This document shows, in pieces, positions 18,127 through 45,802 of a stretch of DNA of 64,000 nucleotides. A model generated the notes under the pieces. The model made no database searches, was not told the DNA's origin, and saw nothing but the letters and a program-made list of their open reading frames with translations. The stretch lies in sequence record MH383160.1, one strand, 5' to 3'. The position numbers and the translations under genes are program-made. Positions within the stretch are counted from its first letter, which is position 1, and every line of letters starts with the position of its first letter.

Positions 18127-18136
18127 TTGGTTTCCT

Positions 18137-19746
18137 TTATATAGATGCCAGGGCGAGGATTTCCCTGTAGGGATTATCTTGTGTTAGTACAGAATAAATG
18201 CAGCTATTGAGATTAATATTTTTAGTACTTTTTGTTCCTAGTTTGTAGTAATCAACGAATGTGTCGTACATGAAACGGTCTTTTATGGTTATACGTTCTA
18301 TATAGAATTGTTGCATAGTATTCCTTATATAGAGATTAGTTTCATTACTTCTCTGTATGTGTACTTTTCGTTTTGTGCATCTCTTGTGACGACATATAGG
18401 AAGGTGTGTTTATCTTTTTTGTTCCCGCAATTGTAGAAAATATTGAACTTATTGAAGTTGAATCTTTCGGCGTGTTGTAGTTTAGTTAAATAGAATTCTA
18501 TGTTCATTTTATTCCTTACATTTCAATAAGTTTAAGTACTGCTCGGTACGTGTACTTAGTTGTCAGTGCTTCTTTAATAGAAACACAGAAGTAATGTTTT
18601 TTGTCTCTTATACTGCCGCGTTTGTAGTACCACACATGGGAGTTGTGACTGTACTTGTCTCTGTCGGATAGTTGTTGGTAGTAGTAGCTTATATGATTCA
18701 TTATAATGTAATTAGCCTTACTATATTAAAGTACTCGGTTCCTGGTGTACCTTGTAGTATATTACGCACGACATTTTTTTGGTGCTGGATGATTGCTGAA
18801 GGTGCGGTTCTTTTTAGTTTTTTTAAAGTACTGAATTCTTGTTTAAGTATGAACTGTACATCTTTAGGGAGAATATCTATGTAGTACTGATGAATGTTTG
18901 TAGTTTTCATATAGCACCTTTTAGAACTTAAAGATGAGGTTCAGGATAGAGCGGTACTTAGTTTCAGGGAACTGATGTTCTATTGCATAACGTGTCGCCA
19001 TCCTGAAATCGTAATTGTAATATAGATTATCCTTTCTCATAGGTGGTGCTAAAGAGAATGATAGCTGGTCTTGCTTGTGTAGTTTACTACCATAGAAATC
19101 TTTATGATTATTCATAGAAGTAGATTAGTCCTATTAAACCTGAGTACATAATATTTTTGTTATTGCATTCGATTGCTTCTAGAGTACTACGTATACAATT
19201 ATTAAAGCAATCTCTACCGAATTGAGTATTGGTACTTACAGGTGATACACTCCTTAGAAACAATTGTTCTTCGTTGCTAAGGTATTTGGTGTAGAATTCT
19301 TTATGTTCAGTATTCATATTAGTACTCGATTAATAGGGTAAGGATGTAATAGTATTGCATACATTCTACCCCTTGTAAAGCATTTCTTATGTTATTATTC
19401 CTGTACGAGTTCAGGAGTTTAGGGCTACGTTTGAGGTGTTTGAAATTAGTTTGTGTATGCAGTAGGCTTTCACGTAGACCTTTTGTTGGTAGTGCATCGA
19501 TGTAGTACTGTTCGATATTCATATAGATAGCAGTACTAAGATTTTTGATAATTGTTTATTGCTATCCCCGCAGATGTTGCTGTGTAAAATACTCACAATG
19601 AGGGTATCAATTGCATTGTTCATCATAAGGGTGCATCCTGGACTATTATAATTTTTTAGCTCAATTAGCCACGAACTATCCGAGAGAAATTCCCCGTACT
19701 CTAGTTCATTTAGAGTATTGAGGTAGTACTTAAGAGTATTTGTCAT
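18137..19746 (-). other. Tandem array A2: 8 related small CDSs (18137-18316, 18325-18507, 18516-18701, 18701-18910, 18921-19115, 19108-19317, 19319-19522, 19519-19746)
   Basis: Same N-terminal (F/Y)Y motif and hydrophobic C-terminal helix; 19108-19317 is a clear paralogue of 15925-16134. 18137-18316 translated by hand. Confidence 0.8.
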
Positions 19747-19771
19747 GTGTAGTTCTCCTTATATTCCTTCT

Positions 19772-19800
19772 ATAGTACACCAGTACTGAAAGGATGTCAA
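19772..19800 (-). promoter_or_regulatory. sigma70 promoter for the small-ORF array, divergent from the plus-strand array
   Basis: TTGACA-17-TACTAT on the minus strand with AGTACT in the spacer. Confidence 0.7.
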
Positions 19801-19848
19801 GGGTTTTCTTTATGGGGTAAATATGATATAATGAATAAGGAGGGAAAT

Positions 19849-20985
19849 ATGTTACCTTTTGCAAGAATGATGAATTATGGGAACGTAGCACCAGATAAAC
19901 TAAAAATACGTGATATTGTTGCAGGTGCTAATTCATTATTACTAATAACAGAGGATAATGAATTATGGGTGCGTGGTAATAATGCGTATGGCAAATTAGG
20001 TATAGGAACTGATACTATAGTGAATGTAACCGAGTGGACTAAAGTTAGAGATGATGTTAAGTTTGCTTGTGCTAGTAATTTAGTATGCGTTGTATTAACT
20101 GTAGATAATAAAATTTTATACTGTGGTGATGAATGGTTTGAATCTGGTGGTTCGACAAGTTCTAAAGTTGTTACATGGAAAGATGTTACGACACAATTTA
20201 GTGCAGTGAATCTAAGCACAGTTCGTGAAATGAAAATAACTTATTATTGTGTAGGATTACTTACAAATGATAATAGATTATATGCTAAAGGATATGATAA
20301 TAACCAATCATTTGGTGGTTCAACAAGCAAAGTTAATGCTGTATTAGTTGCGTCAAATGTTTCAAAATTCTACACTTCTCTATCTGGTACTATATATTCT
20401 AGTACTACTGGTGGTTACTATCGCTGTGGTATAAGCAATACTGGAGCATTGGGTACTAGCACAAATTTAACTTCTTATAATTTGTACTCTGCTCCCGAAT
20501 TTGCATCCGAATGTGCAGTTGGTATGTCAACATTAAACTCTGGTATATTATATTATGATACTAATGGTATCACTAGATATGTTATAGCAGGTCAAAATAG
20601 AAATTATCAACTAGGTAATTCTTCTTCAAATACCACAAACGTATATTCGTATACAGAATTAACCGGATATAGAGGCAGGTTTAGGGATTTGTGGAGTGAT
20701 ATGAATAACTCTGTTCTTTCTTTTGCTATAAGCACAGATGGCAATACTTTATATTATGCTGGTACTAACAATACACTATCTTCTGGTGATCCTGGTGTTG
20801 AATATTCATCTGCATTCAAAGAAGTACCACACGGGTTTAATGATATAACAAAGGCGGCATCGTTAGCATATCTATCTATAGTGCAAGATTCAACGGGATG
20901 GTATTATTCTGGAAATGCAACTACGTTATATGGTTTGCCATCGAGTGGTGAATTTATACCATTACCATTACCAACATTAATTTAA
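19849..20985 (+). CDS. Array gene 1: RCC1/BLIP-II-like beta-propeller with MLPFARMMNYGN tag
   Basis: GxNxxGxLG repeats (RGNNAYGKLGIG, GQNRNYQLGN); start trimmed to MLPF after the GGAGG RBS. Confidence 0.85.
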   Translation: MLPFARMMNYGNVAPDKLKIRDIVAGANSLLLITEDNELWVRGNNAYGKLGIGTDTIVNVTEWTKVRDDVKFACASNLVCVVLTVDNKILYCGDEWFESGGSTSSKVVTWKDVTTQFSAVNLSTVREMKITYYCVGLLTNDNRLYAKGYDNNQSFGGSTSKVNAVLVASNVSKFYTSLSGTIYSSTTGGYYRCGISNTGALGTSTNLTSYNLYSAPEFASECAVGMSTLNSGILYYDTNGITRYVIAGQNRNYQLGNSSSNTTNVYSYTELTGYRGRFRDLWSDMNNSVLSFAISTDGNTLYYAGTNNTLSSGDPGVEYSSAFKEVPHGFNDITKAASLAYLSIVQDSTGWYYSGNATTLYGLPSSGEFIPLPLPTLI

Positions 20986-21057
20986 ATATAGGCCAGTACT
21001 TGATACTGGCTTTCTTTTTTTTGTATTAAATATAGTATAATGAATAAGGAGGGATTT

Positions 21058-22167
21058 ATGTTACCTTTTGGAAGAATGGTTAAGTACGGAAATATTGTAC
21101 CTGGTCCTAAAAATATAATTAAAGTTGGTGCTTCTACACAAGGTCAATTCTTATTGACTGATTCACATGATTTATATTACATAGGTAGAAATCAAGGTGG
21201 TGAATCTGGAAATGGTAATACCAACACGGTATCTTCATGGATATTAGTAAGTGCAGATGTTTCTAATTTTTTCGTGGGTGATCGTACACTTGTTATTATT
21301 AAAAATGATAATACTATATGGACATCAGGTCAAACGTACTGGTTCTCATCTTCTACAACTACTTCTTACAGTACTGTATTAGTTGAAAGGACTAGTTGGT
21401 TTACCACGGCTATACCAGTAAGTGAGATTGCTAATATTGTATGTACAAATGGTTTAATATTTGTACTTAGCACTAATTCAGTACTCTATGGTGCAGGAGA
21501 TAATGGATATCGTGGTTCTTTGGGTATTGGTTCATCATCAATTTATACATTAACTCAATGTGCTACGAACGTTCGTAAAGTAATGACAAATGCGAATGAT
21601 AGTATGTATCTTACATTAGATAATAAGCTATATAGTTCTGGATGGAATAGTAGTGGGCAGCATGGTACGGGGAACCAAACACAAATTAATACTTGGGGAT
21701 TACGTAGTTCTGGTGTAATCGATGCAGCAATTGGTGGTAATGCATTAAATTACTATAATGGTACATCATATTTCGTATGTGGTCAAACTCCAAACTTTCT
21801 TAGTTCAGGTACGACTACATTCCGTGCAGTTCCTGTAAGTACTTTGCCTAATAGTTCTCCGTTGTTTATGACGAATTCACCTGCATTAAATACTGCTACA
21901 CAAATGGTAATTACTAGTACATATCAGAAGGGTGTTGGGGCGAACCGTGGTTTGGGATTAAACAATTCTCAAACTGGTGCTATATATAGTGCTACCAATT
22001 TACAATTACCCGTTGAAGTTAGTGAGATTAGGGATGTTCTTTTTAGTGATGGTTTGACATCGATATTAACCAAAAATGGAGATGTGTATAGTACTGGATC
22101 GTATTACGCCATTCCAGGTGCAATCGAGGATGTTGCAGTCTTTACTAAAATTGATTTACCAAAATAA
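21058..22167 (+). CDS. Array gene 2: RCC1-like propeller with MLPFGRMVKYGN tag
   Basis: GRNQGGESGNG and GWNSSGQHGTG repeats. Confidence 0.85.
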   Translation: MLPFGRMVKYGNIVPGPKNIIKVGASTQGQFLLTDSHDLYYIGRNQGGESGNGNTNTVSSWILVSADVSNFFVGDRTLVIIKNDNTIWTSGQTYWFSSSTTTSYSTVLVERTSWFTTAIPVSEIANIVCTNGLIFVLSTNSVLYGAGDNGYRGSLGIGSSSIYTLTQCATNVRKVMTNANDSMYLTLDNKLYSSGWNSSGQHGTGNQTQINTWGLRSSGVIDAAIGGNALNYYNGTSYFVCGQTPNFLSSGTTTFRAVPVSTLPNSSPLFMTNSPALNTATQMVITSTYQKGVGANRGLGLNNSQTGAIYSATNLQLPVEVSEIRDVLFSDGLTSILTKNGDVYSTGSYYAIPGAIEDVAVFTKIDLPK

Positions 22168-22237
22168 CATAATGCCAGTACTTGATACTGGCTTTTATTT
22201 TTTGATTAAATATAGTATAATGAATAAAGGAGGAATT

Positions 22238-23425
22238 ATGTTACCTTTTGCAAGAATGGTTAAGTACGGGAATAAAGTCATTCCATATGTTCCCAATTTT
22301 ACTAAATTAGTCACCCCAGCAGTTGGTTATTCATTTACATGCACAATGCTGCTGGATGTAAATGGATCAGTGTGGGCTATGGGTCTTCAGAATGGTGGAA
22401 TTTTTGGGTTAGGGAATACTACACAGGTTACTGAATGGACAAAAATATATAGCAATGTTAAAGATTTTTGGTGCAGTACAGGGAATGGGTTTTGTCTAAT
22501 ACGAACAAATGATGATAGATTCTTTTATAGTGGTTTAGATAAATGGCTAGGTAATAATACAACAAATACTGTAACAACATTCACTGAATGTACGAGTTAT
22601 TTTACACAATTTGGTATTTCAAAAATCAAAGAGATATATGTAGGTCTTGATTATGCTTTGATTTTAGGTACTGATAATAGTTTATATTTGTTAGGTGATA
22701 ATAAAAATTCAAAGTTTGGTTTAAACACTGCATCATATTTTAATAAATTTACATTTTTAGTCGATAATGTTAAAAAATTCTGTTCATCCATCACACCCTC
22801 TAACTGGATTATTAAACTAGATAATACAATATGGCGTACTGGGACAACATCTCATGGAACGTTGGGAAATGGAGTTCAAAACACATATATATTTCCTTGG
22901 GTTCAATATAAGGGCACACCTGTTACCGAAGCTATAGACGTTTTTTGTAGTGCGAGTTATATTGGTATTATAACTAAAGGTACACCAGAATCATGTCCTA
23001 TGTATACAATGGGCTATCAAGCTGATGGTCAGTTGGGTAATAATACTACAGCAGGGGGTTATAAATTAACGCCAACGTTATCGAAAACCGTTCCAGATGA
23101 TAGTGAATTCATTCGAATTGAAAACATCTCATCCCGTGGCCTGGTATATTATAGCTCTGGTAAAATTTATAGTACTGGTTATAATAACAATGGTCAATTG
23201 GCAAATAACAGTACAATTAATTCTGGTTCATTTGTTGAAGCAATTTTACCTGATGGTGTTAATTTTAAGAAAAGTGAATCACTTGTAGCTGGGAACGATG
23301 CAACGTTGTATATGTACATTAATAATAAATTATACTACGCGGGGAAATCCCCTGATAATATTTCAGCAAGTAGTTCATCTGTCATGAAAGAGTTCCCACT
23401 TCCAACAATCAATGCCAGTACTTGA
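22238..23425 (+). CDS. Array gene 3: RCC1-like propeller
   Basis: GYQADGQLGN and GYNNNGQLAN repeats; the stop codon lies inside the next cassette hairpin. Confidence 0.85.
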   Translation: MLPFARMVKYGNKVIPYVPNFTKLVTPAVGYSFTCTMLLDVNGSVWAMGLQNGGIFGLGNTTQVTEWTKIYSNVKDFWCSTGNGFCLIRTNDDRFFYSGLDKWLGNNTTNTVTTFTECTSYFTQFGISKIKEIYVGLDYALILGTDNSLYLLGDNKNSKFGLNTASYFNKFTFLVDNVKKFCSSITPSNWIIKLDNTIWRTGTTSHGTLGNGVQNTYIFPWVQYKGTPVTEAIDVFCSASYIGIITKGTPESCPMYTMGYQADGQLGNNTTAGGYKLTPTLSKTVPDDSEFIRIENISSRGLVYYSSGKIYSTGYNNNGQLANNSTINSGSFVEAILPDGVNFKKSESLVAGNDATLYMYINNKLYYAGKSPDNISASSSSVMKEFPLPTINAST

Positions 23426-23477
23426 TACTGGTATTCTTATTTGTATTAAATATAGTATAATGAATAAAGGAGGAATT

Positions 23478-24665
23478 ATGTTACCTTTTGCAAGAATGAT
23501 GAATTATGGGAATATTGTGCCTGTACCACTACAAATTAAGAAAATAATACCAACTGATACTGATGTTGTTGTACTTTATACTGATGGTCAACTATACGCA
23601 CGAGGAAATAATGCTTTTGGGAAGTTTGGAAGAGGCAACAACACTGCATTAAGAACATGGACATTAATTAGAGAAAACGTTAACGATTTCTGGATCACAC
23701 AAGGAACTTTGTTAGTTCAAGATAATGACTTAAATTATTACTATTGTGGATATGGTGATCATATTGGTTTACCAAGTAGTACTACTACGTTTTTAAGTTA
23801 TAACCAATATATTGAAAATTTGTTCACGCAAAGTTCAAGTACTTCAATTAAACAGATGTATGCAGGTACTACGTGGTTTACTTTCTTAATGGATAATAAT
23901 ACAATATGGAGTACTGGTTGGAGTGGGGGTAAACAATTCGCTGATGGTACGGGTAGTACTCAACAAATAACAGATGGATCATTTGTAAAAGCTGTCACGC
24001 CTGATGTTGATATTGCACAAATACAGTCAACAAATAACTGTGTAATGTTTTTTGATACACAAAATAATTTATATATTGGTGGTGGTACGTCAGGTATAAG
24101 TACTAGTACTACATGGACTTCATATAATGAATATACTTTATATAAACCAAGTACAACATACACAAAAACGTTACAATACACTGGATGCTCAAGTGGTGCA
24201 GTCAGTGCTTTGGTTGAGAATCCAAGTACTGGTGCACGTCAGTTTCTAGTTGGTGGTTTAGCGAATAATGGTGCATGGGGCAACAATACCACAACCAGTT
24301 CAGCACTTGCTGTATTAGGGAGCAATAGTACGACATTACCACCCGGTACTTTGTATTCAATTCATACTGGATACCCAACACAATCTAGTATACTAGTTAC
24401 GAGTACTGGTGTATATGCAACTGGTTTAAATGCGAGTAGTTATGCTGGCTCTTTGGGTGTAGGTTCTAATGTTACTATTGGTAAATTTACTGCATGTCCA
24501 ATGCCTACACAAATAACATATTCTATGTATGATAAAATAAAAATATATAGAGGTTCATATCGTACATTTCTAACTGATATGAAAAATATATATTCAACCG
24601 GAACTTATGATGATGGTGGTCCTAGTACAACTAGATATGTACTAGATACACCCCGTCAATTATAA
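23478..24665 (+). CDS. Array gene 4: RCC1-like propeller
   Basis: RGNNAFGKFGRG repeat; MLPFARMMNYGN tag. Confidence 0.85.
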   Translation: MLPFARMMNYGNIVPVPLQIKKIIPTDTDVVVLYTDGQLYARGNNAFGKFGRGNNTALRTWTLIRENVNDFWITQGTLLVQDNDLNYYYCGYGDHIGLPSSTTTFLSYNQYIENLFTQSSSTSIKQMYAGTTWFTFLMDNNTIWSTGWSGGKQFADGTGSTQQITDGSFVKAVTPDVDIAQIQSTNNCVMFFDTQNNLYIGGGTSGISTSTTWTSYNEYTLYKPSTTYTKTLQYTGCSSGAVSALVENPSTGARQFLVGGLANNGAWGNNTTTSSALAVLGSNSTTLPPGTLYSIHTGYPTQSSILVTSTGVYATGLNASSYAGSLGVGSNVTIGKFTACPMPTQITYSMYDKIKIYRGSYRTFLTDMKNIYSTGTYDDGGPSTTRYVLDTPRQL

Positions 24666-24736
24666 TATAATAGCCAGTACTCAGTACTGGCTTTCTTATT
24701 TGTATTAAATATAGTATAATGAATAAAGGAGGAAGT

Positions 24737-25474
24737 ATGTTACCTTTTGGAAGAATGGTAAAGTACGGGAATAAAATTGAATATAAGCCAGATGGTGAAC
24801 AATTAATCACGACAATAGGAACAACACAATTTACAGTTCCTGCTGGCGTTACCGAAATATCAGTATGTGTTATTTCGCCGGGTGGTCAACGTGGTGCTGG
24901 TGGCGGCTTATCGTGGCGTAATAATATTCCGGTTACTAGTGGTGAGTACTTAAGTGTTTCTCTTACACATCCCAACACTACTACACCAGTTGAAAACGGT
25001 TTATATCGTGGAACTGAAAAACTATGTGTTAGCTTCACTGGTGAATATAGGGTTGGTGGACTAGGTGGGAAAGCTGCTAACGCTATTAATGATGGTGGTG
25101 GTAATGGGGGCAACGCTGGTGTAAGTGGTGGTGCAGTCATTGGTGGTGGTGCTGGTGGCTACACTGGTAAAGGTGGTAACGGAGATGCAATCACTGGTGA
25201 AAATGGTGCTGGCGGCGGCGGTGGTGGTGGTGCATTCTATAATACCTCGTTCATTGGTACGGGTGGTGGTACTGGTATCATTGTTCAAGGTGCTAATGGT
25301 ATTGGCGGTAGATACGATGGTTCATATAATGGTGGTGCTGGTAGTGGTGGTGCTGGTAAGATGTATGGTGGTGGTGGTAGTATATGGGATAATTTTTCTT
25401 ATACGGCTGCTGGTGGTGGTGCTGTGCGAATAATATGGGGACGTGGGAGATATTATCCTAACAATTCAGTCTAA
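24737..25474 (+). CDS. Array gene 5: glycine-rich (polyglycine, adhesin-like) protein with the same MLPFGRMVKYGN tag
   Basis: Many GGxGG/GGGGGG runs, ending GGGAVRIIWGRGRYYP; no RCC1 repeats. Confidence 0.8.
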   Translation: MLPFGRMVKYGNKIEYKPDGEQLITTIGTTQFTVPAGVTEISVCVISPGGQRGAGGGLSWRNNIPVTSGEYLSVSLTHPNTTTPVENGLYRGTEKLCVSFTGEYRVGGLGGKAANAINDGGGNGGNAGVSGGAVIGGGAGGYTGKGGNGDAITGENGAGGGGGGGAFYNTSFIGTGGGTGIIVQGANGIGGRYDGSYNGGAGSGGAGKMYGGGGSIWDNFSYTAAGGGAVRIIWGRGRYYPNNSV

Positions 25475-25546
25475 AATATAGGCCAGTACTTGATACTGGC
25501 TTTCTTATTTGTATTAAATATAGTATAATGAATAAGGAGGGGAATT

Positions 25547-26689
25547 ATGTTACCTTTTGCAAGAATGGTTAAGTACGGGAATATAGCACCAGTTCCAGTA
25601 GTTCCTACAATAAAAGATTTTAAGATTGGCTTTTCACATGAAGTGTTATTGGACAGTGCAGGTGATGCATGGGGTATTGGATACAATACAGATGGGCAGT
25701 TAGGCTTTTTGGATGCAAATACCAATTCACTAGGTGTGTGGTCTAAGATATATACTGATGTTCGATTAATTGGAGTTACTGCTAGATATACAGTGGTAGT
25801 TACTAATAATAATAGAATCCTTTACGCAGGAAATAACTTAATTTCTAGTACTACTACTCTTGGGTGGACCGATATAACTGCCAGTATGGGTCCGGTTGCG
25901 GTGGATAGCATCGATGCATTATATTGCACAGATGGTATGATGCATATTAAAACTTCAGATGGTTCTTTATATGCATATGGTCGTAACATGAACGCAAACA
26001 GTGGTGTTACTGGTGGTGTTATTAGTGTTGCAACTAAGGTTAATTTGCCTTCTGCTGTAAATGACATGCGATATACGTTTAGTTATGGTTCAGTACTATG
26101 TCGATTGGATACGACTTCTATATACGCATGGGGACGAAACACAAATGGTGAATTAGGCCAGGGTAATACAACAGCTATCGTTACCCCAAAACTATTGTCT
26201 GGTGCTTCTATTGCAATGGGTACTTCGTATAATGCTACTGCAATTGTTTCTGGTTCTGCATCGTTAGTTACGTGTGGTGGTCAGAACAGTGGTCAGTTGG
26301 GTAATGGTATTACTACTGATGGTAATGTTTACGTATATGCTGCTAGAACATACCCAGGCGATCTTAATACTATAAGAAGTCCAGTGGATTGTAGTACAAC
26401 GTACACCTCTGCATTTATGAGTCCAGATGGTATATATTACACTGGTGCTAACCGAAGCATGTTTGGTGGTATTAGTGGTGCTGCTACCGTTGGTGTATAT
26501 ACTAAATGTAGTGATTTACCAATAACATATTCTAATATAATTCAGTGGGGTAGTGGTACTATTGGTGGTGCTATATGTAGTAGTACAGAGTTATACCAAT
26601 GTGGCATCGGTCGATACATTGCTGGCGATGGTGCGAGCACAACCAGGTATGGATTTAGGAAGACACCATTACCTTGGGATGTTTATTGA
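25547..26689 (+). CDS. Array gene 6: RCC1-like propeller
   Basis: GYNTDGQLG, GRNTNGELGQG and GQNSGQLGNG repeats. Confidence 0.9.
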   Translation: MLPFARMVKYGNIAPVPVVPTIKDFKIGFSHEVLLDSAGDAWGIGYNTDGQLGFLDANTNSLGVWSKIYTDVRLIGVTARYTVVVTNNNRILYAGNNLISSTTTLGWTDITASMGPVAVDSIDALYCTDGMMHIKTSDGSLYAYGRNMNANSGVTGGVISVATKVNLPSAVNDMRYTFSYGSVLCRLDTTSIYAWGRNTNGELGQGNTTAIVTPKLLSGASIAMGTSYNATAIVSGSASLVTCGGQNSGQLGNGITTDGNVYVYAARTYPGDLNTIRSPVDCSTTYTSAFMSPDGIYYTGANRSMFGGISGAATVGVYTKCSDLPITYSNIIQWGSGTIGGAICSSTELYQCGIGRYIAGDGASTTRYGFRKTPLPWDVY

Positions 26690-26760
26690 AATTATGCCAG
26701 TACTTTGTACTGGCTTTTCTTTTTGTATTAAATATAGTATAATGAATAAAGGAGGGAAGT

Positions 26761-27936
26761 ATGTTACCTTTTGCAAGAATGGTTAAGTACGGGAATAGAG
26801 TTCCAGCACCTTCAGGTGTTATGAAGATAAGTACATCTCATGTACATATGGGTATGTTATTCGATACAGGCAATTTATATCTACGTGGATTAGGTACACA
26901 GTACAGGTTAGGAAATGATAGTACTGCGACACTACAAAATGGGTGGGTCAAGTGTCCATATAAAGTTTCTGATGTTTGGTGCTTCTTCGCAGCGACAATT
27001 ATACTTACGACTGATGGAGAATTTTACTTAGCTGGTCAAATGGGTTATGTCGGTGTCTCTGCATCACCAGTTCCTGGATGGACTAATATCACATCTTTAT
27101 TGTCTACAATACCAGCACTTACTACAGTGGTAGATATAGCTTCTACTGAAACTACCGAATCAAATGGTTCGTTATTGATTTTGTTAAGTAATGGGGACTT
27201 ATATGGTATTGGGCGTAATACAGGAGGTGTATTGGGTGTTACTGGTATACAAACAACGCCGATTCAGATTGCTACTGGAGTTAGTATGATTGCGGGAACA
27301 CCGTCAGGTGAGGCTTTCCATTATGTCAAAAATAATCAATACTACAGATGTGGGAATAACGCAAGTTACAACTTAGGGTCAAGTTCTTCTAAACTTTCTA
27401 CATTTACGGTAAGTACTGATATATCGGGAACAGTTATTGGTATTTCATGTACTACATTAACGACTTCAGTACTTACATCTAATAATGGTAATATTAGAGT
27501 ATATAATGCTGGCAGAAACACTGATTATTGTTTAGGAATAGGGTATGGAGACACTAAGACTATAATGAGTCCATTTAGTATGACTCCAGCAATTGTTGGT
27601 ATCACACCAGATGCTAATTCAATGAATAACCACTGTTTGAATTATTCTTTAATGGCAATGACACAGAATGGTAAGCTTTATACATGTGGTAGTGGTGTTG
27701 CTCTTGGTTGGCCTGTTTCTATTGAATCAGAAAGATCTTATTATCACCAGGTACAATATGAGGATATGGATATTGCACCAGATGTTAATGCATTTTCAGC
27801 ACAAGGGGGTTCCGGTGTGTTATACGCATTAGTGGGGACAAATGAGGTGTACTGGTGTGGTAGTGGTTCTATGTTCCAGGAACAGAGTGCAGGTACACGA
27901 CAAGTTAAAATGAAGAAAATGATTTTACCGGAATAG
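26761..27936 (+). CDS. Array gene 7: RCC1-like propeller
   Basis: N-terminal blade closely similar to gene 10 (HMGMLFDTGNLYLRG vs HVGLLYSTGNMYMRG). Confidence 0.85.
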   Translation: MLPFARMVKYGNRVPAPSGVMKISTSHVHMGMLFDTGNLYLRGLGTQYRLGNDSTATLQNGWVKCPYKVSDVWCFFAATIILTTDGEFYLAGQMGYVGVSASPVPGWTNITSLLSTIPALTTVVDIASTETTESNGSLLILLSNGDLYGIGRNTGGVLGVTGIQTTPIQIATGVSMIAGTPSGEAFHYVKNNQYYRCGNNASYNLGSSSSKLSTFTVSTDISGTVIGISCTTLTTSVLTSNNGNIRVYNAGRNTDYCLGIGYGDTKTIMSPFSMTPAIVGITPDANSMNNHCLNYSLMAMTQNGKLYTCGSGVALGWPVSIESERSYYHQVQYEDMDIAPDVNAFSAQGGSGVLYALVGTNEVYWCGSGSMFQEQSAGTRQVKMKKMILPE

Positions 27937-27945
27937 GAGGAAAAT

Positions 27946-29133
27946 ATGTTACCTTTTGCAAGACTGGTCAAGTACGGGAATAAGATACCACCACCCGCTG
28001 GTATCCGCAAGATTAATACTTATGGATTAGGGCATTTATTTTTAACTACCGATGGTAAGTTATTTGCATATGGTTCAAATAATGAGTATCGTTTTGGTAC
28101 ACCAACCACTTCGATTGTTGGTGGAGTGCCTAGCTTAGTTCTTATAAATGTAGCTATGATATACTGTCATCCAGCATATACTATATGTCTAATGAATGAT
28201 GGAAGATATATGGCGGCGGGGAATTTAAGTCAATTTGGATTAGGTTCACAAACAAGTTTCGTTGATGTGAGTTCATTTTTCAGCACATTAGGAACTATTA
28301 CAAAGATTGCAATTACACGCCGTGAAACACCAGGAACTAGTACAATATACGCATTGAATAGTACTGGAATATTATATGCTATGGGTTCAAATAACCGTGG
28401 ACAGTTTGGTAATAATACCCTAACTGGGAAGATAGGTGAATTTGTACAAATCAACACTAACTGTAAAGATGTGGTAACCTGTTCTTATGAAACAGTTGTT
28501 GTGTTAAAGAACGATAACACAGCTTGGTTTTGTGGTAATTATGGATTAACATCTGGATCATCTGATATTAAGGTATTCACCAATATAGGTGATACTGATA
28601 TCCTTTCAATCAATTCGGATGGTTCAGGCGGCTCATTGTTATACACCAAGAGTACTGGATTATATGTTCGTGGTTTGCTCACTTCATTGTATGGATTGAC
28701 GTATACTTCAGGTTCCCAGGGAACTAACAGATTAGCAGTTCTTCCCTTTACATACGATAGTGCTAATTTTAGATACTGGACTGATCCAGAGGGTCAAGGA
28801 CCATCATGTTGGATTCAGGATTTGAGTACAGGTACACGTTATGCAACTGGCTCTACTAATAGTAGCAATGGCAGATTAGGATTTAGTGTTCCGACAGCTT
28901 CTGGTAATAGTTTCAGAGAGCAGGTTATAAACCTACCAGAAGGTACATCAACAATGACAGTACTGTCAGTTGGTATGGGAAATAATTATTCTGCATTAAT
29001 TAGCACCGATGGTATAGTATATGGTTCAGGTGCATTCAACGGGTATGGTGCATATCCAGGAACAGAAGTGGTGAACTACCCTGACTCCAATCCTACACTA
29101 TTTCAATATGAGCCAATTAAATTGGGTATATGA
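27946..29133 (+). CDS. Array gene 8: RCC1-like propeller (RBS only, no own cassette)
   Basis: GSNNRGQFGN repeat; starts 10 nt after the gene 7 stop. Confidence 0.85.
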   Translation: MLPFARLVKYGNKIPPPAGIRKINTYGLGHLFLTTDGKLFAYGSNNEYRFGTPTTSIVGGVPSLVLINVAMIYCHPAYTICLMNDGRYMAAGNLSQFGLGSQTSFVDVSSFFSTLGTITKIAITRRETPGTSTIYALNSTGILYAMGSNNRGQFGNNTLTGKIGEFVQINTNCKDVVTCSYETVVVLKNDNTAWFCGNYGLTSGSSDIKVFTNIGDTDILSINSDGSGGSLLYTKSTGLYVRGLLTSLYGLTYTSGSQGTNRLAVLPFTYDSANFRYWTDPEGQGPSCWIQDLSTGTRYATGSTNSSNGRLGFSVPTASGNSFREQVINLPEGTSTMTVLSVGMGNNYSALISTDGIVYGSGAFNGYGAYPGTEVVNYPDSNPTLFQYEPIKLGI

Positions 29134-29214
29134 AGTATGTATATCAAACAGCCAGTACTTGATACTGGCTTTTCTTTTTGATTAAATATAGTATAATGAA
29201 TAAAGGAGGGATTT

Positions 29215-30394
29215 ATGTTACCTTTTGCAAGAATGGTTAAGTACGGGAATATAGCACCTATATATGAATCTAGTGTAATTAAAATGCAAGCACCATCGGC
29301 TTTTACCAACAACACATTGATGATTCTGTATAAGAACGGTGATTTGTGGGGTATTGGCGGTAACAATGCTGGTATATTCGGTCTTGGAAATACAACGACA
29401 CAGACCAAATGGGTTCGCTTAATGCAAAATGTGAAAAATTTTTGGTGCACAAGGAATGCTTCATATAGCTTAGTTCAGACCAATGATAATAAATTTTATT
29501 ATGCAGGTTGGAACCTTTGGACTGGTACATCTAGTGCAGTTCAAAGTACTACATTTGTTGATTGTACGTCTTATTTTTCAGGTTTTAATGTGGATAATAT
29601 CAAGGAGATATATCCAAATGTTCGTAATATGTTTTTACTAACAAATGATAGTGTTCTTTACGCAATAGGTGATAATTCAACCTATGAGTTGGGTAGTAGT
29701 TCATCTACACTTACATCATTTACACAGGTTAATATTAATGTTAAAAAGGTTAGTTCATTTTTCAATAGTCCAACTTGGATAATTAAAAATGATAATTCAG
29801 CATGGAGATGTGGTAAAACTAGTACTGGTACATTGTTAACTGGTTCTGCTACTGATACTTTGACGAGTTGGACAAAGTATAGTTTTCCTACAGGCCAGTA
29901 CCCCGTTGATATAATTTCATATAACAATATGTTGGGTATAGTTCTTAATGTAGATAATACTTATCCGCTATATGGTGTAGGGTCACAAAATTCACGGACA
30001 ATTAGGAAATGGTGTTCTATCTAATACTAATAAGATATCTTTAACGCCACAAAGTACTTATTTACAATTAACTAATGTTTCCGATTTTGAATTTATACAA
30101 ACATATTCACAAAATCCTAGGGGATTATTATATAGAAATGGAAGTCGTATTTTTGGAACAGGGTATAATAATTATGGACAGCTTGGTAACAATTCATCTA
30201 ATAATGCTTCAATTTTTGTCCAAGCACAATTTCCAAATTCTGTAGTTTATGATCCGTCAACATCGTTGGTTGCTGCGAATGACAATGCATTATTTGCATA
30301 TGTGAATGGGAAATTATACTACACTGGTATGTCTCCAGTGGGGACAGTTGTTGGTACATGGACTTTAACTGAATACCAATTGCCACAAATTTAA
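29215..30394 (+). pseudogene. Array gene 9: RCC1-like propeller split by a +1 frameshift at CGG 29995-29997 (pseudogene, recoded gene or sequence error)
   Basis: Frame 1 stops at 30024. Skipping C29995 gives GSQNS-GQLGNG...GYNNYGQLGN...LPQI* (stop 30392-30394), colinear with the C-terminus of gene 3. Confidence 0.85.
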
Positions 30395-30404
30395 GGAGAA
30401 AATT

Positions 30405-31574
30405 ATGTTACCTTTTGGAAGAATGTTAAAGTACGGAAATATTAAACCAACTCTTCCTGAAATAAAGAAATTGGATGGTAGTCAATTACATGTCGGATTA
30501 CTTTATAGTACAGGGAATATGTACATGCGTGGTTCTGGTTCGAACTATAAATTAGGTACAGGGGATGCTAGTGATGTATTCGGTGGTTGGGTACATGTAC
30601 CCTATGAAGTTGATGATTTTTGGGCGTGTGTATCCGGTACATTAATAAAGACTGTTGATAATAAATTATATTGTGCAGGTCTATACATGGGTGGATATTT
30701 TGGGGCTAGTGGTTCATATGTTAACTGGACTGAAGTAACTTCATTATTTGTAGGTATTGACGTGTCGCAAATAAAGAATATAGAATTTACGTCAGCGGGT
30801 ACGTCAGGTAGTACACTAATATTGATGTTAGATGGTCGTTTATATGGGTTCGGTATGAACAGTAGATCCGAGTTAGGTGTTAATAACAAAGTTGTATCTC
30901 CCATTCTTATAGATACTGGGGTAAGTGCAATAGGAGCACATAAGTTAGGGGGTTCATCGTTCCATTATATAAAAGGCGGTAAGTACTACAGATGTGGAAC
31001 ATCGGTTGGTAGTAATATTGGAAGTTCTTCTTTGACTACTTTTACTGTATTGAGTATTCCTGATAACGTTATATCTATGCAAATATTATATGACAACGTA
31101 CAGTTATTATGTGTAGGAAGTTCTGGATATAGTATCTATATGGCTGGTTCGAATGATTATGGTGGAAGAGGTGTTGGCGGTTCTACGGTTTATACTACAT
31201 TCAGGAAAATAGATCTTACAGGATTTGGTGTTGTTCCCAGTGAAATACTATTTGAAAATGCCGGAAATGGTTATGTTAATATATCAACTGATAGTACTGG
31301 AGTATATACATGTGGTGGTGGTGCGGGTGTTAACGGTTTAGGTAGACCAACTAATGTAATACCAAGTTCACAGTTGGGGGTAGTTCAGTTCAGTACTGGA
31401 GTAGAACAATCAAATATAAGTCGTGTGTATTCACAGAGTTCGAGTTCTGTTATATATTGTATAGTCAATAATGAATTGTACTGGGCTGGTAGTAATTCAT
31501 ATTTTACTGATCAAACCACATCCACTGGTACACAATTTTCATTTATTAAGATGAAGGACATGCCTTCTGCTTAG
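30405..31574 (+). CDS. Array gene 10: RCC1-like propeller (RBS only)
   Basis: GMNSRSELG and GSNDYGGRG repeats; MLPFGRMLKYGN tag. Confidence 0.85.
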   Translation: MLPFGRMLKYGNIKPTLPEIKKLDGSQLHVGLLYSTGNMYMRGSGSNYKLGTGDASDVFGGWVHVPYEVDDFWACVSGTLIKTVDNKLYCAGLYMGGYFGASGSYVNWTEVTSLFVGIDVSQIKNIEFTSAGTSGSTLILMLDGRLYGFGMNSRSELGVNNKVVSPILIDTGVSAIGAHKLGGSSFHYIKGGKYYRCGTSVGSNIGSSSLTTFTVLSIPDNVISMQILYDNVQLLCVGSSGYSIYMAGSNDYGGRGVGGSTVYTTFRKIDLTGFGVVPSEILFENAGNGYVNISTDSTGVYTCGGGAGVNGLGRPTNVIPSSQLGVVQFSTGVEQSNISRVYSQSSSSVIYCIVNNELYWAGSNSYFTDQTTSTGTQFSFIKMKDMPSA

Positions 31575-31645
31575 ATTTTATGCCAGTACTTAACACTGGC
31601 TTTTCTTTTTGATTAAATATAGTATAATGAATAAAGGAGGATTTT

Positions 31646-32851
31646 ATGTTACCTTTTCCAAGGATGATAAAATACGCAAATAAAATGAAAGTTCCTGAAG
31701 TGAAAGAAATCTTTATTTACAATGGTTATAGTGCGTCAGTTATTCCAGCAACAGCACTCTTACTATTATATAAAAATGGAGACTTAATGGGTATAGGTGG
31801 AACTAGTTCACAAAACTATGGATTCGGAAATGGTGTACCTAATGCGAAAGTAAAAGAGTGGACTTTAATATACCAAAATGTAAAACGTTTTAGAACAGCC
31901 CAAGGTTCTTTTAATTTAATCCAAACCGAAGATAATAAATTTTATTACAGTGGCGTAGGTAGAGCTATTGGTACAGGATTAAGTACTGTCAGTACTTATA
32001 CTGATTGTACTTCATATTTTACATCAGTATTCAATGCAACACAATTGTCCCAAATTAAGGACATTCAAATTGTAGGGGAGGGTATTTTTGTTTTACTTCA
32101 AAATGGTACGCTATATGGAATGGGGGCCAATACACAGGGATATTTTGGTAATAACACAACCACAAGATTATCAACATTTACTTCAATTAATACGAATGTG
32201 GATAGTGTAAAAACAGGTTCAAGTGCAGTGATTGTACAGAAAATTGATAAAACACTTTGGGTCACTGGTCAAAACACATGGGGTTCACTTGGTATAAGCA
32301 ATGGTGAAACTAACATTAGAGTATGGACACAAATGGGTGCATTAGCCAACAATACTGTTATACATTATGAACTTGGTGGGAGTGCATCATGGGTTGTATC
32401 TAAACACAACACGAATAATACATATACAGTTCGTGCAAGTGGGATTCAATCGGAAGGTAACTTGGGTAATGGTTCAGCCGCTTCATCAGGGACAGTATTA
32501 TCTACAATCTCCACTCTACCAATATCCGATAATATGGAAATGAAATCAAATTCATTAACATATGGTGGGCTTACGGTTAAAACTACCAATTCACTTTATA
32601 TGTGTGGTATAAACACATATGGTAGGCTCGGTCGCGGTAATACAACATCAAGTACTACATTTGTAGTTCCAGTTGATGCACCTAAAGTTGGCAGCATCGA
32701 GTTATTCTGTCCAAGTGAATGTACAAATGTGTATATGGATAATCAAGGGGATGTGTATTTGAGTGGCTATATCCCACAAGCGACAGGTACAACAGTTTCT
32801 GATTATTACACTAAATTTCAATTATATAAAATACCCAGTCGTGGTATATAA
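31646..32851 (+). CDS. Array gene 11: RCC1-like propeller
   Basis: GQNTWGSLG and GINTYGRLGRG repeats; MLPFPRMIKYAN tag. Confidence 0.9.
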   Translation: MLPFPRMIKYANKMKVPEVKEIFIYNGYSASVIPATALLLLYKNGDLMGIGGTSSQNYGFGNGVPNAKVKEWTLIYQNVKRFRTAQGSFNLIQTEDNKFYYSGVGRAIGTGLSTVSTYTDCTSYFTSVFNATQLSQIKDIQIVGEGIFVLLQNGTLYGMGANTQGYFGNNTTTRLSTFTSINTNVDSVKTGSSAVIVQKIDKTLWVTGQNTWGSLGISNGETNIRVWTQMGALANNTVIHYELGGSASWVVSKHNTNNTYTVRASGIQSEGNLGNGSAASSGTVLSTISTLPISDNMEMKSNSLTYGGLTVKTTNSLYMCGINTYGRLGRGNTTSSTTFVVPVDAPKVGSIELFCPSECTNVYMDNQGDVYLSGYIPQATGTTVSDYYTKFQLYKIPSRGI

Positions 32852-32922
32852 AATAAAGCCAGTATTTTGTACTGGCATTTTTTTGTCCTAAATATAATAA
32901 CGATTTACATTTGGAGGATACA

Positions 32923-34075
32923 ATGCTACCCTTTGGAAGAATTATCACATCATCAAAAAAGAACATACAACCTTCTGTTACAAAAATAGCTTCATCTGAT
33001 ACAACAGTTTTTGCCCTTATGTCAGATGGTACGTTGTACAGTAGAGGCTCTCAAGAGTTTGGGCAAATGGGTATAGGTAATATTATAACACAAACCAAAT
33101 GGGTTTTGTGCAATACAAACGTAGAAGATCTATGGGTTCGGGTATGAGTCAACATTAATTAAAAAGAAAGATAATACGATGTGGTATGCTGGAAATGGTG
33201 CATCATTCGGTTTATCAACTGATAAGTCAACAACGTGGGCTTCTGCAAAGATAGTGTTTGATAGAATAACAGCACTTGGAAAAACAATAAAACAAATTGC
33301 AGTTAGTGCAGGTGCATTAAGCGTATTATGTACAGACAACACGATATGGAATACGGGTTATGGTAGTTATGGACAACTGGGAAATGGTAGAAGTACCGAT
33401 TCACTTTCATCATTTGTACAAGGAACAGTACCTACTGGAGTAACACCATCCAAAATACTGGCAAATTTTCTTATGCAAGGATTTATTGGAACCGATGGGA
33501 GATTGTATTATACTGGTGCAATATCAGGCGTAGGTACAACCGACATGACGTTATATTCAAAGTACACGTTATGTTCTCAAATAACTAATACCTATACGGT
33601 GAAAGATTATACAACAAACTCAAGTTACTTCGCTTTTGCTATAGCAAGTAATAATAGTACTAATAAATTATTTGCATATCATGGTGGTGGACAATACTTT
33701 GGTCAGTTAGCAAATGGTTCTACATCACAAACATATATTTCGTTAAGACAAACAACACAAGCACCAGGTGATATAATAAGAAGCAGTGTGGGTTATTCAT
33801 ATTTTTCTAATCATATTATAACTTCATTAGGTGTTTACGCAACTGGTTATAACACAGGCGATAACGCAGGTCAATTGGGTATAGGTACACAAACAGATGT
33901 GTCGGCCTATACCAAATGTGTACTACCAATAGAGATGAATATGAATAACGTATATGTTACAGCAACTTTATACAGAACTTACTTAACCGATGGTATACAA
34001 ATTTACAGTACTGGACAAAATATTACAGATGGCGGTATTGCCAGTACTGTATTTGTCAAAGATTCACCATTTTAG
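32923..34075 (+). pseudogene. Array gene 12: RCC1-like propeller split by a +1 frameshift at CGG 33139-33141
   Basis: Frame 1 stops at 33147. Skipping C33139 gives LWV-GYESTLIKKKDNTMWYAG, continuing into ORF 33179-34075. Confidence 0.85.
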
Positions 34076-34718
34076 GAATATTGTACAAAGTGTATGCGGT
34101 TATTTTAGAACTCTTTTTAAATTCATCGTAAAGATAATTCAAAATTTTGGAACATTCAATATACTTTTCAATATCTTTATGGATTAATGAGTACTGAAAC
34201 ATTAAATCAGATGATATATTGTAGGTACTACCTTTTAAACTGTTTAAAATATCACAGATTTCAGGGTTTACGGGTACTTCGTCAAAATTATCATCTAAAA
34301 CATTTATTTCAAAATCAAAGCTATCTTTGTTTTTGATTAATTTGATAATAGAATCACCATAAACATTATATTGTTTTAATGGATTTACTACAATGTTAAA
34401 AAGATTGGATGTATTACAATCAATATCCATAAAGTATGTATTATCATTATACTTAATATTGAAACATCCGTACTCAATAAAATCACCCGGAGTTATTGAT
34501 GAGTTTCTTCTCGTTTCAACATAAGAAGCTTTAATTTTGTTTTTATTTAAAAGAGTAATAAATTTCTTAGACTGTTTAGCACCAGCTAAGTAAGTATTAT
34601 AACTTGGTCTTTTAAAAATTATAGGACTAGTCTTCTCACCAGAGAAATATTTTTTTATAAATTTACGCTGTTTAACGAAATAATTTTTATAAAACAAACC
34701 TAATTTTGTTTTCATCAT
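34056..34718 (-). CDS. Hypothetical protein (220 aa), convergent with the array
   Basis: ORF with GGAG RBS; CCAGTACT-tgat-AGTACTGG hairpin at 34733-34752 just upstream. Confidence 0.75.
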   Translation of the reverse strand: MMKTKLGLFYKNYFVKQRKFIKKYFSGEKTSPIIFKRPSYNTYLAGAKQSKKFITLLNKNKIKASYVETRRNSSITPGDFIEYGCFNIKYNDNTYFMDIDCNTSNLFNIVVNPLKQYNVYGDSIIKLIKNKDSFDFEINVLDDNFDEVPVNPEICDILNSLKGSTYNISSDLMFQYSLIHKDIEKYIECSKILNYLYDEFKKSSKITAYTLYNIPKMVNL

Positions 34719-34759
34719 AACTCCTTATACATCCAGTACTTGATAGTACTGGATTTTTA

Positions 34760-44412: not shown

Positions 44413-44421
44413 ATATGTCTC

Positions 44422-45457: not shown

Positions 45458-45802
45458 TTTTACCCCAATATATATTCAGAGAGTAATGTATTAGCTTCAT
45501 CTTTGTTCTTAAGGTAATACATGTAATATAGATTCGGTTCACCATCTTTAGCACTCAAATCGAAGTACTTTAAACTATGTACTTTCATAGTAAAAACAAA
45601 TAATGACTTAAAACCAATTTCACCGTACTTAATAAACAGTTCATCCAAATGAATGTAACTTTTTGATTTGGATAATTCTTTAACGTCTGCATCAATTTCA
45701 GATAAAAGATGCTTACCTATTAAGTTTTCAAATGAACGCATGATTTTATCCTTTACCGCAATTTTTATGGTTTATTAAGAATACACCAGAACATCAGTTC
45801 TG

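What the first reader, a model, noticed from the sequence alone, without database searches (positions are those of the whole stretch)
19849..34075. Twelve-gene array of interchangeable adhesin-like heads sharing a 12-residue N-terminal tag
Seen: all 12 genes start MLPF(A/G/P)R, with (M/L)xxY(G/A)N in 11, then diverge almost completely; 11 continue as Ser/Thr/Gly-rich RCC1-like propellers and one as a glycine-rich domain. This is the only plus-strand block, and ten genes have their own TAAATA late-type promoter. Established: beta-propellers and polyglycine domains serve as receptor- or glycan-binding modules. Inference: the tag is a docking peptide that plugs alternative tips into a common virion socket (fibre, whisker or baseplate), giving a multivalent or mosaic host-recognition system.
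Basis: partly seen in the sequence, partly recalled or inferred. Interest (0 to 1): 0.88.

Follow-up and report, generated by a model that had tools for sequence, protein, structure and literature searches.

The report
Shared address peptide on phage lectin-like proteins
A giant E. coli phage carries twelve late genes for sugar-binding-type protein heads that all begin with the same 12-residue peptide, which most likely fastens these interchangeable heads to the virus particle; the peptide itself seems not to have been described before.

Summary
The window is Escherichia phage UB, a 353-kb jumbo myovirus of the genus Asteriusvirus (121Q/PBECO4 group). Twelve plus-strand genes begin MLPF.R. Eleven of them continue with Y-(G/A)-N at positions 10-12. 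The first 12 residues are 83% identical between paralogues, against 21% for the rest. Eleven heads are RCC1-like seven-bladed propellers and one is a glycine-rich, fibre-tip-like domain. Ten genes have their own TAAATA promoter, the motif that also precedes this phage's capsid and tail genes. Two genes (the 9th and 12th) each carry one frameshift.

New here: the peptide is kept through synonymous codon changes and occurs across several genera. There it precedes RCC1, Kelch, concanavalin-like and glycine-rich heads. In structure models it is a free, unstructured N-terminus. Published virion proteomes contain the tagged proteins: 8 of 15 in phAPEC6, 7 of 9 in CBB, and GAP32 gp1 and gp2. CBB peptide data show the tag is still attached in virions. 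Homology blocks between related phages start and stop at the tag and the intergenic cassette, so heads are shuffled as cassettes.

The docking-peptide reading is well supported, but the socket, an exterior location and a host-recognition role are not shown. The "DNA condensation" annotation is unsupported.

The parts
19849..20985 (+). Gene 1: tag plus RCC1-like propeller (378 aa). It has no close counterpart in JP4, PBECO4, 121Q or phAPEC6.
21058..22167 (+). Gene 2: tag plus RCC1-like propeller (369 aa).
22238..23425 (+). Gene 3: tag plus RCC1-like propeller (395 aa).
23478..24665 (+). Gene 4: tag plus RCC1-like propeller (395 aa).
24737..25474 (+). Gene 5: tag plus beta-sandwich and glycine-rich domain (245 aa), PHROG 4474.
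25547..26689 (+). Gene 6: tag plus RCC1-like seven-bladed propeller (380 aa). This is the propeller that was modelled.
26761..27936 (+). Gene 7: tag plus RCC1-like propeller (391 aa). It heads a two-gene unit with gene 8.
27946..29133 (+). Gene 8: tag plus RCC1-like propeller (395 aa). It has no promoter of its own.
29215..30394 (+). Gene 9: tag plus RCC1-like propeller, interrupted by one frameshift. The same state is seen in 121Q, JP4 and phAPEC6. The shortened phAPEC6 counterpart (gp007) was detected in virions.
30405..31574 (+). Gene 10: tag plus RCC1-like propeller (389 aa). It has no promoter of its own.
31646..32851 (+). Gene 11: tag (P at residue 5, A at residue 11) plus RCC1-like propeller (401 aa).
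32923..34075 (+). Gene 12: degenerate tag (only the first six residues kept) plus RCC1-like propeller, interrupted by one frameshift. The same split is seen in 121Q and PBECO4, and in a similar form in JP4.
19812..19848 (+). Promoter-like TAAATA motif and Shine-Dalgarno site before gene 1.
20990..21057 (+). Intergenic cassette: terminator hairpin, TAAATA promoter motif, Shine-Dalgarno site.
22174..22237 (+). Intergenic cassette (hairpin, promoter motif, Shine-Dalgarno site).
23411..23477 (+). Intergenic cassette (hairpin, promoter motif, Shine-Dalgarno site).
24672..24736 (+). Intergenic cassette (hairpin, promoter motif, Shine-Dalgarno site).
25480..25546 (+). Intergenic cassette (hairpin, promoter motif, Shine-Dalgarno site).
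26696..26760 (+). Intergenic cassette (hairpin, promoter motif, Shine-Dalgarno site).
29150..29214 (+). Intergenic cassette (hairpin, promoter motif, Shine-Dalgarno site).
31582..31645 (+). Intergenic cassette (hairpin, promoter motif, Shine-Dalgarno site).
32858..32922 (+). Intergenic cassette, diverged copy (hairpin, promoter motif, Shine-Dalgarno site).

Best explanation
The array encodes late-expressed, virion-associated, lectin-like binding modules: RCC1-type propellers and one fibre-tip-like glycine-rich domain.

Each module carries the same free N-terminal 12-residue peptide followed by a short proline-containing linker. The peptide is an address or docking tag. It stays on the mature protein and, by binding one common multi-copy site on the particle, fastens whichever heads are made to the virion. 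Particles would therefore display a mixed set of heads.

The likely role is weak, multivalent adhesion to surface polysaccharides of hosts or of the gut environment.

The repertoire is renewed by recombination at the repeated unit of terminator, promoter, ribosome site and tag-coding DNA, which swaps whole heads between related phages.

Shown: the anatomy of the array, selection on the tag, the diversity of head folds, virion association in relatives, retention of the tag in virions, and cassette-level mosaicism.

Inferred: that the tag itself mediates incorporation, that there is one socket, that it lies on the outside, and that the heads bind glycans.
For: - Tag versus rest: 83% against 21% identity.
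- Conserved positions in 27 distinct Asteriusvirus versions: P3, F4 and R6 in 27 of 27; Y10 and G11 in 24 of 27; N12 in 25 of 27. They are kept through synonymous codons (CCT/CCC/CCA/CCG, AGA/AGG/CGA, TAC/TAT, GGG/GGA/GGT) in Asteriusvirus, a 361-kb metagenomic relative, GAP32 and CBB.
- In the metagenomic relative all 14 array genes carry the tag, although most lack the conserved upstream DNA.
- Heads behind the tag: RCC1, Kelch, Laminin_G_3 (concanavalin-like) and Gly_rich_2.
- Models: the propeller has pLDDT 90.7 and the glycine-rich protein 93.1. In both, about the first 20 residues are low-confidence and lie outside the fold.
- Virion proteomes: phAPEC6 has 8 of 15 tagged proteins among 62 of 551 detected proteins (hypergeometric P about 6e-5). 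CBB has 7 of 9, with 9.5-51% sequence coverage. GAP32 gp1 was identified by MS, and gp2 is annotated as a virion structural protein.
- Tag-spanning tryptic peptides of CBB_536, CBB_548 and CBB_553 appear in the published CBB peptide report.
- TAAATA lies upstream of 10 of 12 array genes and 19 of 24 structural genes, against 4 of 45 neighbouring small ORFs.
- Homology blocks with JP4, PBECO4 and 121Q end 20-43 nt after an ATG and restart in the intergenic cassettes. Gene order is permuted in PBECO4.
- An RCC1 domain sits among tail-fibre genes in phage phiCD211.
- Glycine-rich tips are receptor-binding in the Pam3 and S16 fibres.
Against: - No partner protein was identified, and no complex prediction could be run.
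- The virion proteomes also list a few non-structural-looking proteins (topoisomerase subunit, PhoH-like), so co-purification is not excluded.
- Peptide counts in phAPEC6 are low, 1-5 per protein.
- Within UB the tag-coding DNA is nearly identical between copies, so part of its local uniformity is recombination or gene conversion rather than selection.
- No binding data exist for any head.
Confidence: 0.55

Rival explanations
1. The tag is a capsid-targeting peptide. It would carry the proteins into the prohead as internal or ejected proteins. This is the logic of the T4 internal proteins and of the 'inner body / DNA condensation' idea of the phAPEC6 authors.
For: - A short shared N-terminal peptide on otherwise unrelated proteins, encoded at a hypervariable locus, is exactly the T4 internal-protein pattern (my own knowledge).
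- The proteins are virion-associated.
- phAPEC6 has an inner body whose proteins are unassigned.
- The phage encodes a ClpA-like protein inside its structural module.
Against: - The tag is retained in virion protein rather than cut off.
- The proteins are near-neutral and poor in charged residues: pI 5.2-9.0, about 12% charged.
- They are compact 25-45 kDa beta folds of lectin or receptor-binding type. Such folds suit DNA condensation or passage through a tail tube poorly.
- The glycine-rich head resembles a fibre tip.
Confidence: 0.17
2. The conserved 5' end is a nucleic-acid feature. It would be a repeated expression and recombination cassette (terminator, promoter, ribosome site, first codons) kept uniform by gene conversion, and the peptide would have no docking role.
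For: - Eight identical 23-mers and nearly identical first 36 nt within UB.
- Recombination block boundaries fall in this unit.
Against: - The peptide is conserved where the upstream DNA is not (metagenomic relative, CBB, GAP32), and through synonymous changes.
- The leader plus tag RNA folds no better than shuffled sequence (z = 0.01).
- It matches no Rfam family.
Confidence: 0.1
3. The tag is recognised by an assembly chaperone or a Clp-type machine for folding, quality control or timing, and not by a structural socket.
For: - Rak2-like phages encode ClpA-like and ClpS-like proteins.
- The tag is a free, unstructured N-terminus.
Against: - The proteins end up in virions with the tag still on.
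- No link between the tag and these genes was tested.
Confidence: 0.06
4. The proteins are what the database names say: regulators of chromosome condensation, or DNA-condensing proteins.
For: Only the Pfam and PHROG family names and the suggestion in the phAPEC6 paper.
Against: - The name comes from eukaryotic RCC1, whose partner Ran has no bacterial counterpart (my own knowledge).
- The proteins have neutral pI.
- The same tag sits on Kelch, concanavalin-like and glycine-rich heads.
Confidence: 0.02

Closest known systems
RCC1-like 'DNA condensation protein' arrays already annotated in 121Q, PBECO4 and phAPEC6
   Same: These are the same genes. Multiple copies were noted in the CBB and phAPEC6 papers, and several members were found in phAPEC6 virions.
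   Different: I found no mention in those papers of the shared N-terminal peptide, of its presence on non-RCC1 heads, or of cassette shuffling. They propose DNA condensation. A full-text search of the held library for the tag letters found nothing.
T4 internal proteins with their capsid-targeting sequence
   Same: A roughly ten-residue shared N-terminal address on unrelated proteins, encoded at a hypervariable locus (my own knowledge).
   Different: Here the tag is retained in the virion. The proteins are large, neutral, lectin-like beta folds. Location is unknown.
Modular tailspikes and tail fibres with a conserved N-terminal anchor domain and exchangeable distal domains (for example the branched systems of CBA120, G7C and K1-type phages)
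   Same: Conserved N-terminus, variable receptor-binding part, and horizontal exchange of heads between relatives.
   Different: The anchor here is 12 residues with no fold of its own, not a domain of about 100 residues. The heads are globular propellers or lectin domains, not trimeric fibres or beta-helices. Attachment to the tail is not shown.
Cyanophage Pam3 gp24 and phage S16 gp38 glycine-rich fibre tips (and the ALK glycine-rich domain)
   Same: Gene 5 has a beta-sandwich followed by a glycine-rich region. Its best solved-structure matches are 7yfw and 7lir.
   Different: The TM-scores are low (0.28 and 0.24). The helical docking domain of gp24 is replaced by the 12-residue tag.
Cohesin-dockerin assembly of cellulosomes
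   Same: Many different modules with one common tag plug into repeated sockets and give mosaic assemblies. This is an analogy only.
   Different: Dockerin is a folded domain of about 70 residues. There is no sequence or structural relation, and the socket here is hypothetical.
Promoter-stem-loop cassettes that mediate modular shuffling in T4-type genomes
   Same: Repeated intergenic stem-loop plus promoter units lie at the borders of exchanged genes.
   Different: The promoter motif here is the one found before structural genes, and the repeat extends into the first 12 codons.

Membership tests
RCC1-like repeat beta-propeller (Pfam RCC1, RCC1_2, WD40_RLD) | RCC1 repeats detectable above Pfam's gathering score | tested here: met
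   In seven of the eight RCC1-type proteins tested, RCC1_2 (24.1-43.7 bits, cut-off 22) and/or RCC1 (22.5-37 bits, cut-off 21.7) pass. Gene 10 (19.3 and 15.6 bits) and the downstream piece of gene 12 (21.0 bits) fall just below.
RCC1-like repeat beta-propeller (Pfam RCC1, RCC1_2, WD40_RLD) | Seven-bladed propeller fold | tested here: met
   The gene 6 model has pLDDT 90.7, and TM-score 0.76 to UVR8 and 0.65-0.66 to human RCC1.
RCC1-like repeat beta-propeller (Pfam RCC1, RCC1_2, WD40_RLD) | Ran exchange-factor or chromatin-binding function (the basis of the 'chromosome condensation' name) | not testable with these tools
Neutral pI and low charge and the absence of Ran in bacteria argue against it.
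Glycine-rich receptor-binding tip (Pfam Gly_rich_2; Pam3 gp24, S16 gp38, ALK glycine-rich domain) | Match to PF21722 | tested here: inconclusive
   Gene 5 itself has no Pfam hit at E up to 1. Its homologues, and the tagged 267-aa protein of the metagenomic relative, do match PF21722.
Glycine-rich receptor-binding tip (Pfam Gly_rich_2; Pam3 gp24, S16 gp38, ALK glycine-rich domain) | Beta-sandwich plus glycine-rich lattice fold | tested here: inconclusive
   The top solved matches are the Pam3 fibre (probability 0.95, TM 0.28) and the ALK glycine-rich domain (TM 0.24). Viral predicted glycine-rich proteins match with TM up to 0.74.
Modular phage receptor-binding proteins with an N-terminal anchor | Conserved N-terminus with exchangeable distal part | tested here: met
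Modular phage receptor-binding proteins with an N-terminal anchor | The anchor is an independently folded domain | tested here: not met
   The tag is 12 residues and is low-confidence and unstructured in both models.
Modular phage receptor-binding proteins with an N-terminal anchor | Component of the particle | tested here: met
   Shown for relatives only, through published virion proteomes: phAPEC6, CBB and GAP32.
Modular phage receptor-binding proteins with an N-terminal anchor | Sits on the baseplate or tail and binds the host receptor | not testable with these tools
   No structural localisation or binding data exist.
T4-type internal proteins with a capsid-targeting sequence | Short shared N-terminal peptide on otherwise unrelated proteins | tested here: met
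T4-type internal proteins with a capsid-targeting sequence | The peptide is removed from the mature virion protein | tested here: not met
   Tryptic peptides covering tag residues 7-12 (two proteins) and 10-12 (one protein) are present in the CBB virion peptide report. The first six residues were not observable.
T4-type internal proteins with a capsid-targeting sequence | Located inside the head | not testable with these tools
   No localisation data exist.
Stem-loop plus promoter shuffling cassettes of T4-type phages | Repeated intergenic stem-loop plus promoter at the borders of exchanged modules | tested here: met
   Hairpins and promoter motif. Block borders at the cassettes. The promoter class differs from the early-promoter cassettes described for T4 (my own knowledge).

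The most novel reading that the evidence does not exclude
A so far unrecognised peptide-address system for building mosaic virions. One short N-terminal peptide would plug any of a dozen or more lectin-like heads (RCC1, Kelch, concanavalin-like, glycine-rich) into one repeated socket on the particle, for example the hexon-centre or sheath-ring decoration sites seen in 121Q and phAPEC6. This would give giant phages a combinatorial glycan-binding coat. The principle may recur with a different address peptide in the rV5-like phages (Vequintavirinae).
Probability: 0.35. Interest if true: 0.85.

Novelty: new variant of a known kind. Interest (0 to 1): 0.7.

Why it matters
- It replaces a misleading annotation ('regulator of chromosome condensation / DNA condensation protein') that is spread over dozens of jumbo-phage records.
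- It points to the hypervariable, probably host- or environment-facing part of phages that are being isolated for therapy of E. coli, Salmonella, Cronobacter and plant pathogens.
- It gives a concrete handle, a 12-residue peptide, for finding the unassigned decoration or fibre-anchoring sites seen in low-resolution maps of 121Q and phAPEC6.
- If one small peptide is enough for incorporation into the particle, that would be a new and unusually economical assembly principle.

Tried and rejected
- **Tag as the closing ('velcro') strand of the propeller:** rejected. The propeller closes without it, the tag is low-confidence and outside the fold, and the same tag sits on non-propeller heads.
- **RNA-level explanation for the conserved 5' end:** no Rfam family matches, and the fold energy equals that of shuffles.
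- **The tagged proteins are the long 'hairs':** unlikely. The heads are globular, and CBB has hairs but no RCC1 gene. They could still sit on such fibres.
- **DNA condensation:** no support.
- **Sequence search of gene 5 against solved structures:** nothing found.
- **tRNA scan of the window:** none found.
- **Finding the socket:** not achieved. Both structure-prediction jobs went on single chains, and no tool here predicts complexes.
- **Tag in Rak2 and K64-1:** I did not scan these phages, so the limits of the tag's distribution are not drawn. The exact-pattern scan of viral contigs found it in seven contigs: five whole jumbo-phage genomes of 348-378 kb and two shorter ones of 24 and 109 kb.

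Full report
**Identity of the window.** Megablast places window 19000-35000 at 100% identity on Escherichia phage UB (MH383160.1, 353 kb, Asteriusvirus PBECO4). UB is a Rak2-like jumbo myovirus of E. coli. It is a bacteriophage. In the record the genes of the finding are called 'regulator of chromosome condensation', 'putative DNA condensation protein' or 'hypothetical protein'.

**The observation.**
- A six-frame scan finds 12 reading frames that begin MLPF. All are on the + strand, between 19849 and 32923, and there are none elsewhere in the window. There are also none in 148 kb of the rest of the genome.
- Among the ten intact genes the first 12 residues are 83% identical on average and the remainder 21%.
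- Pfam finds RCC1-type repeats in all eight RCC1-type proteins tested, and PHROG 4219 covers the eight tested in that library, adding g3 and g4.
- The gene at 24737 is glycine-rich and belongs to PHROG 4474.
- The 9th and 12th genes each read as two pieces in two frames against intact relatives, that is, one frameshift each.
- The same interrupted state is present in 121Q, JP4 and phAPEC6 for the 9th gene. For the 12th it is present in 121Q and PBECO4, and in a similar form in JP4.
- The shortened phAPEC6 counterpart of the 9th gene (gp007) was detected in virions.

**Expression signals.**
- Nine spacers hold a G+C-rich hairpin followed by a T run, then a promoter-like stretch that contains TAAATA 31-34 nt before the ATG, then AAGGAGG. 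The first gene has the promoter motif and ribosome site but no complete hairpin.
- Eight copies share an identical 23-mer, where none is expected by chance.
- Genes 8 and 10 lack these signals and follow their neighbours directly. The array therefore reads as ten transcription units.
- The same TAAATA motif stands within 70 nt upstream of 19 of 24 structural genes of this phage that I inspected. These include the major capsid, scaffold, sheath, neck, baseplate hub and long tail fibre genes. It stands upstream of only 4 of 45 neighbouring minus-strand small ORFs.
- The phage encodes its own sigma factor next to structural genes.
- So 'late-type' is supported by analogy within this genome, not by expression data.

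**What the proteins are.**
- The model of gene 6 (pLDDT 90.7) is a seven-bladed propeller, closest to UVR8 (TM 0.76), RPGR, HERC2 and RCC1.
- The model of gene 5 (pLDDT 93.1) is a beta-sandwich followed by a glycine-rich region. Its two best solved matches, though weak, are the cyanophage Pam3 fibre and the ALK glycine-rich domain.
- The Pam3 paper describes these two structures as relatives and as the receptor-binding tip of the fibre, together with S16 gp38.
- In both models about the first 20 residues are low-confidence and outside the fold. So the tag is a free N-terminal peptide and not the closing strand of the propeller.
- The proteins have pI 5.2-9.0 and few charged residues, which does not fit DNA condensation.

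**The tag beyond this phage.**
- A 361-kb metagenomic relative has 14 array genes. All begin with the MIPF form of the tag, and most have no conserved upstream DNA. Their heads are RCC1, Kelch, Laminin_G_3, Gly_rich_2 and one unknown fold.
- GAP32 (Mimasvirus) has at least three tagged genes: an RCC1 protein (gp1), a concanavalin-like protein (gp2), and one that runs off the record end.
- CBB has nine tagged genes in one region, with Kelch and concanavalin-like heads and no RCC1 head.
- Xanthomonas phage XaC1 has a diverged form.
- An exact-pattern scan of 2.9 million viral contigs found the tag in seven contigs: five whole jumbo-phage genomes of 348-378 kb and two shorter ones of 24 and 109 kb.
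- Column counts show positions 3, 4, 6, 10, 11 and 12 held through several synonymous codons. This means selection acts on the peptide.
- The leader plus tag RNA folds no better than shuffled sequence and matches no Rfam family.

**Virion association.** Published proteomes of purified particles say the opposite.
- phAPEC6 lists gp003, 005, 006, 007, 009, 010, 549 and 551. All are tagged array members, 8 of 15, with P about 6e-5 against 62 of 551 detected proteins.
- CBB lists CBB_536, 537, 548, 549, 551, 552 and 553. That is 7 of 9 tagged genes, with 9.5-51% coverage.
- GAP32 gp1 was identified by MS, and gp2 is annotated as a virion structural protein.
- The CBB peptide report contains tryptic peptides that start inside the tag in three proteins: after residue 6 in two of them and after residue 9 in one. 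So the tag is still on the protein in the particle. The first six residues make too short a tryptic peptide to be seen.

**Interchangeability.**
- Against JP4, PBECO4, 121Q and phAPEC6, single UB heads are either 97-100% identical, or 71-93%, or have no counterpart above about 30%.
- Nucleotide homology blocks end 20-43 nt after an ATG (for example at 19883, 22274, 24773 and 30443) and restart in the hairpin and promoter cassettes (for example at 20988 and 23411).
- Gene order is permuted in PBECO4.
- The repeated unit, including the tag-coding DNA, is therefore also the recombination joint.

**Mechanism proposed.** The tag is a retained address peptide that fastens alternative lectin-like heads to a common repeated site on the particle. 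The array is a shuffled repertoire for multivalent adhesion.
- Candidate sites are the unassigned decoration at each hexon centre and the fibre bases on capsid and sheath, seen in 121Q and phAPEC6. This is speculation.
- The main rival is an internal, capsid-targeted cargo. Tag retention, the fold types and the charge count against it, but it is not excluded.

**Comparison with what is known.**
- The arrays and their virion presence were already noted in the literature.
- The shared peptide, its use on four folds across genera, its retention in virions and the cassette borders were not found in the papers I could search.
- I file this as a new variant of the known 'conserved anchor, exchangeable receptor-binding head' design, with an anchor reduced to 12 residues.

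**Limits.**
- All virion evidence comes from relatives, not from UB itself.
- No complex prediction was possible.
- Rak2 and K64-1 were not scanned.

Noticed in passing
window 15346-19746, minus strand: A tandem array of about 20 small paralogous genes of roughly 60 aa lies directly upstream of the RCC1 array. Most begin MHKE(Y/F)Y or MNKEHKEFY and end in a hydrophobic LI(F/Y)(R/K)(Y/F)-like tail. They are almost wholly unannotated in the UB record. [quoted passage not shown]
   Followed up: partly
window 34760-37540, minus strand: A run of eight back-to-back genes of 104-141 aa lies directly downstream of the array. The three whose translations I read (123, 141 and 122 aa) look like hydrophobic membrane proteins. 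The CBB and GAP32 annotations call the corresponding genes 'putative membrane protein'.
   Followed up: no
window 38803-40266, minus strand: A 487-aa endonuclease-like gene is present at 99% identity or more only in UB and 121Q. Weak relatives (26-35% identity) are annotated as homing endonucleases in Vibrio, Aeromonas and Klebsiella phages. PBECO4 has a different endonuclease at this place. It is probably a mobile homing endonuclease.
   Followed up: partly
P0056, P0083 (Salmonella phage PVP-SE1 gp19), L033:5995-6645 (Cronobacter phage CR3 gp255): In rV5-like phages of about 150 kb (Vequintavirinae), the same glycine-rich and concanavalin-like heads carry a different short N-terminal peptide of the type M-x-E-(M/L)-(L/M). 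This may be a second address peptide in another phage lineage.
   Followed up: partly
L007:43927-46215 (UB record 43927-46215): A ClpA-like protein is encoded inside the structural gene module of UB. CBB and GAP32 also encode a ClpS-like adaptor next to a structural gene. Any relation to the tag was not tested.
   Followed up: no
window 29215-30394 and 32923-34075: The frameshifted state of the 9th and 12th genes is shared by several phages that are 97-100% identical there. The shortened product of the 9th gene's phAPEC6 counterpart is in the virion proteome. So these may be tolerated, or even used, rather than dead genes.
   Followed up: partly
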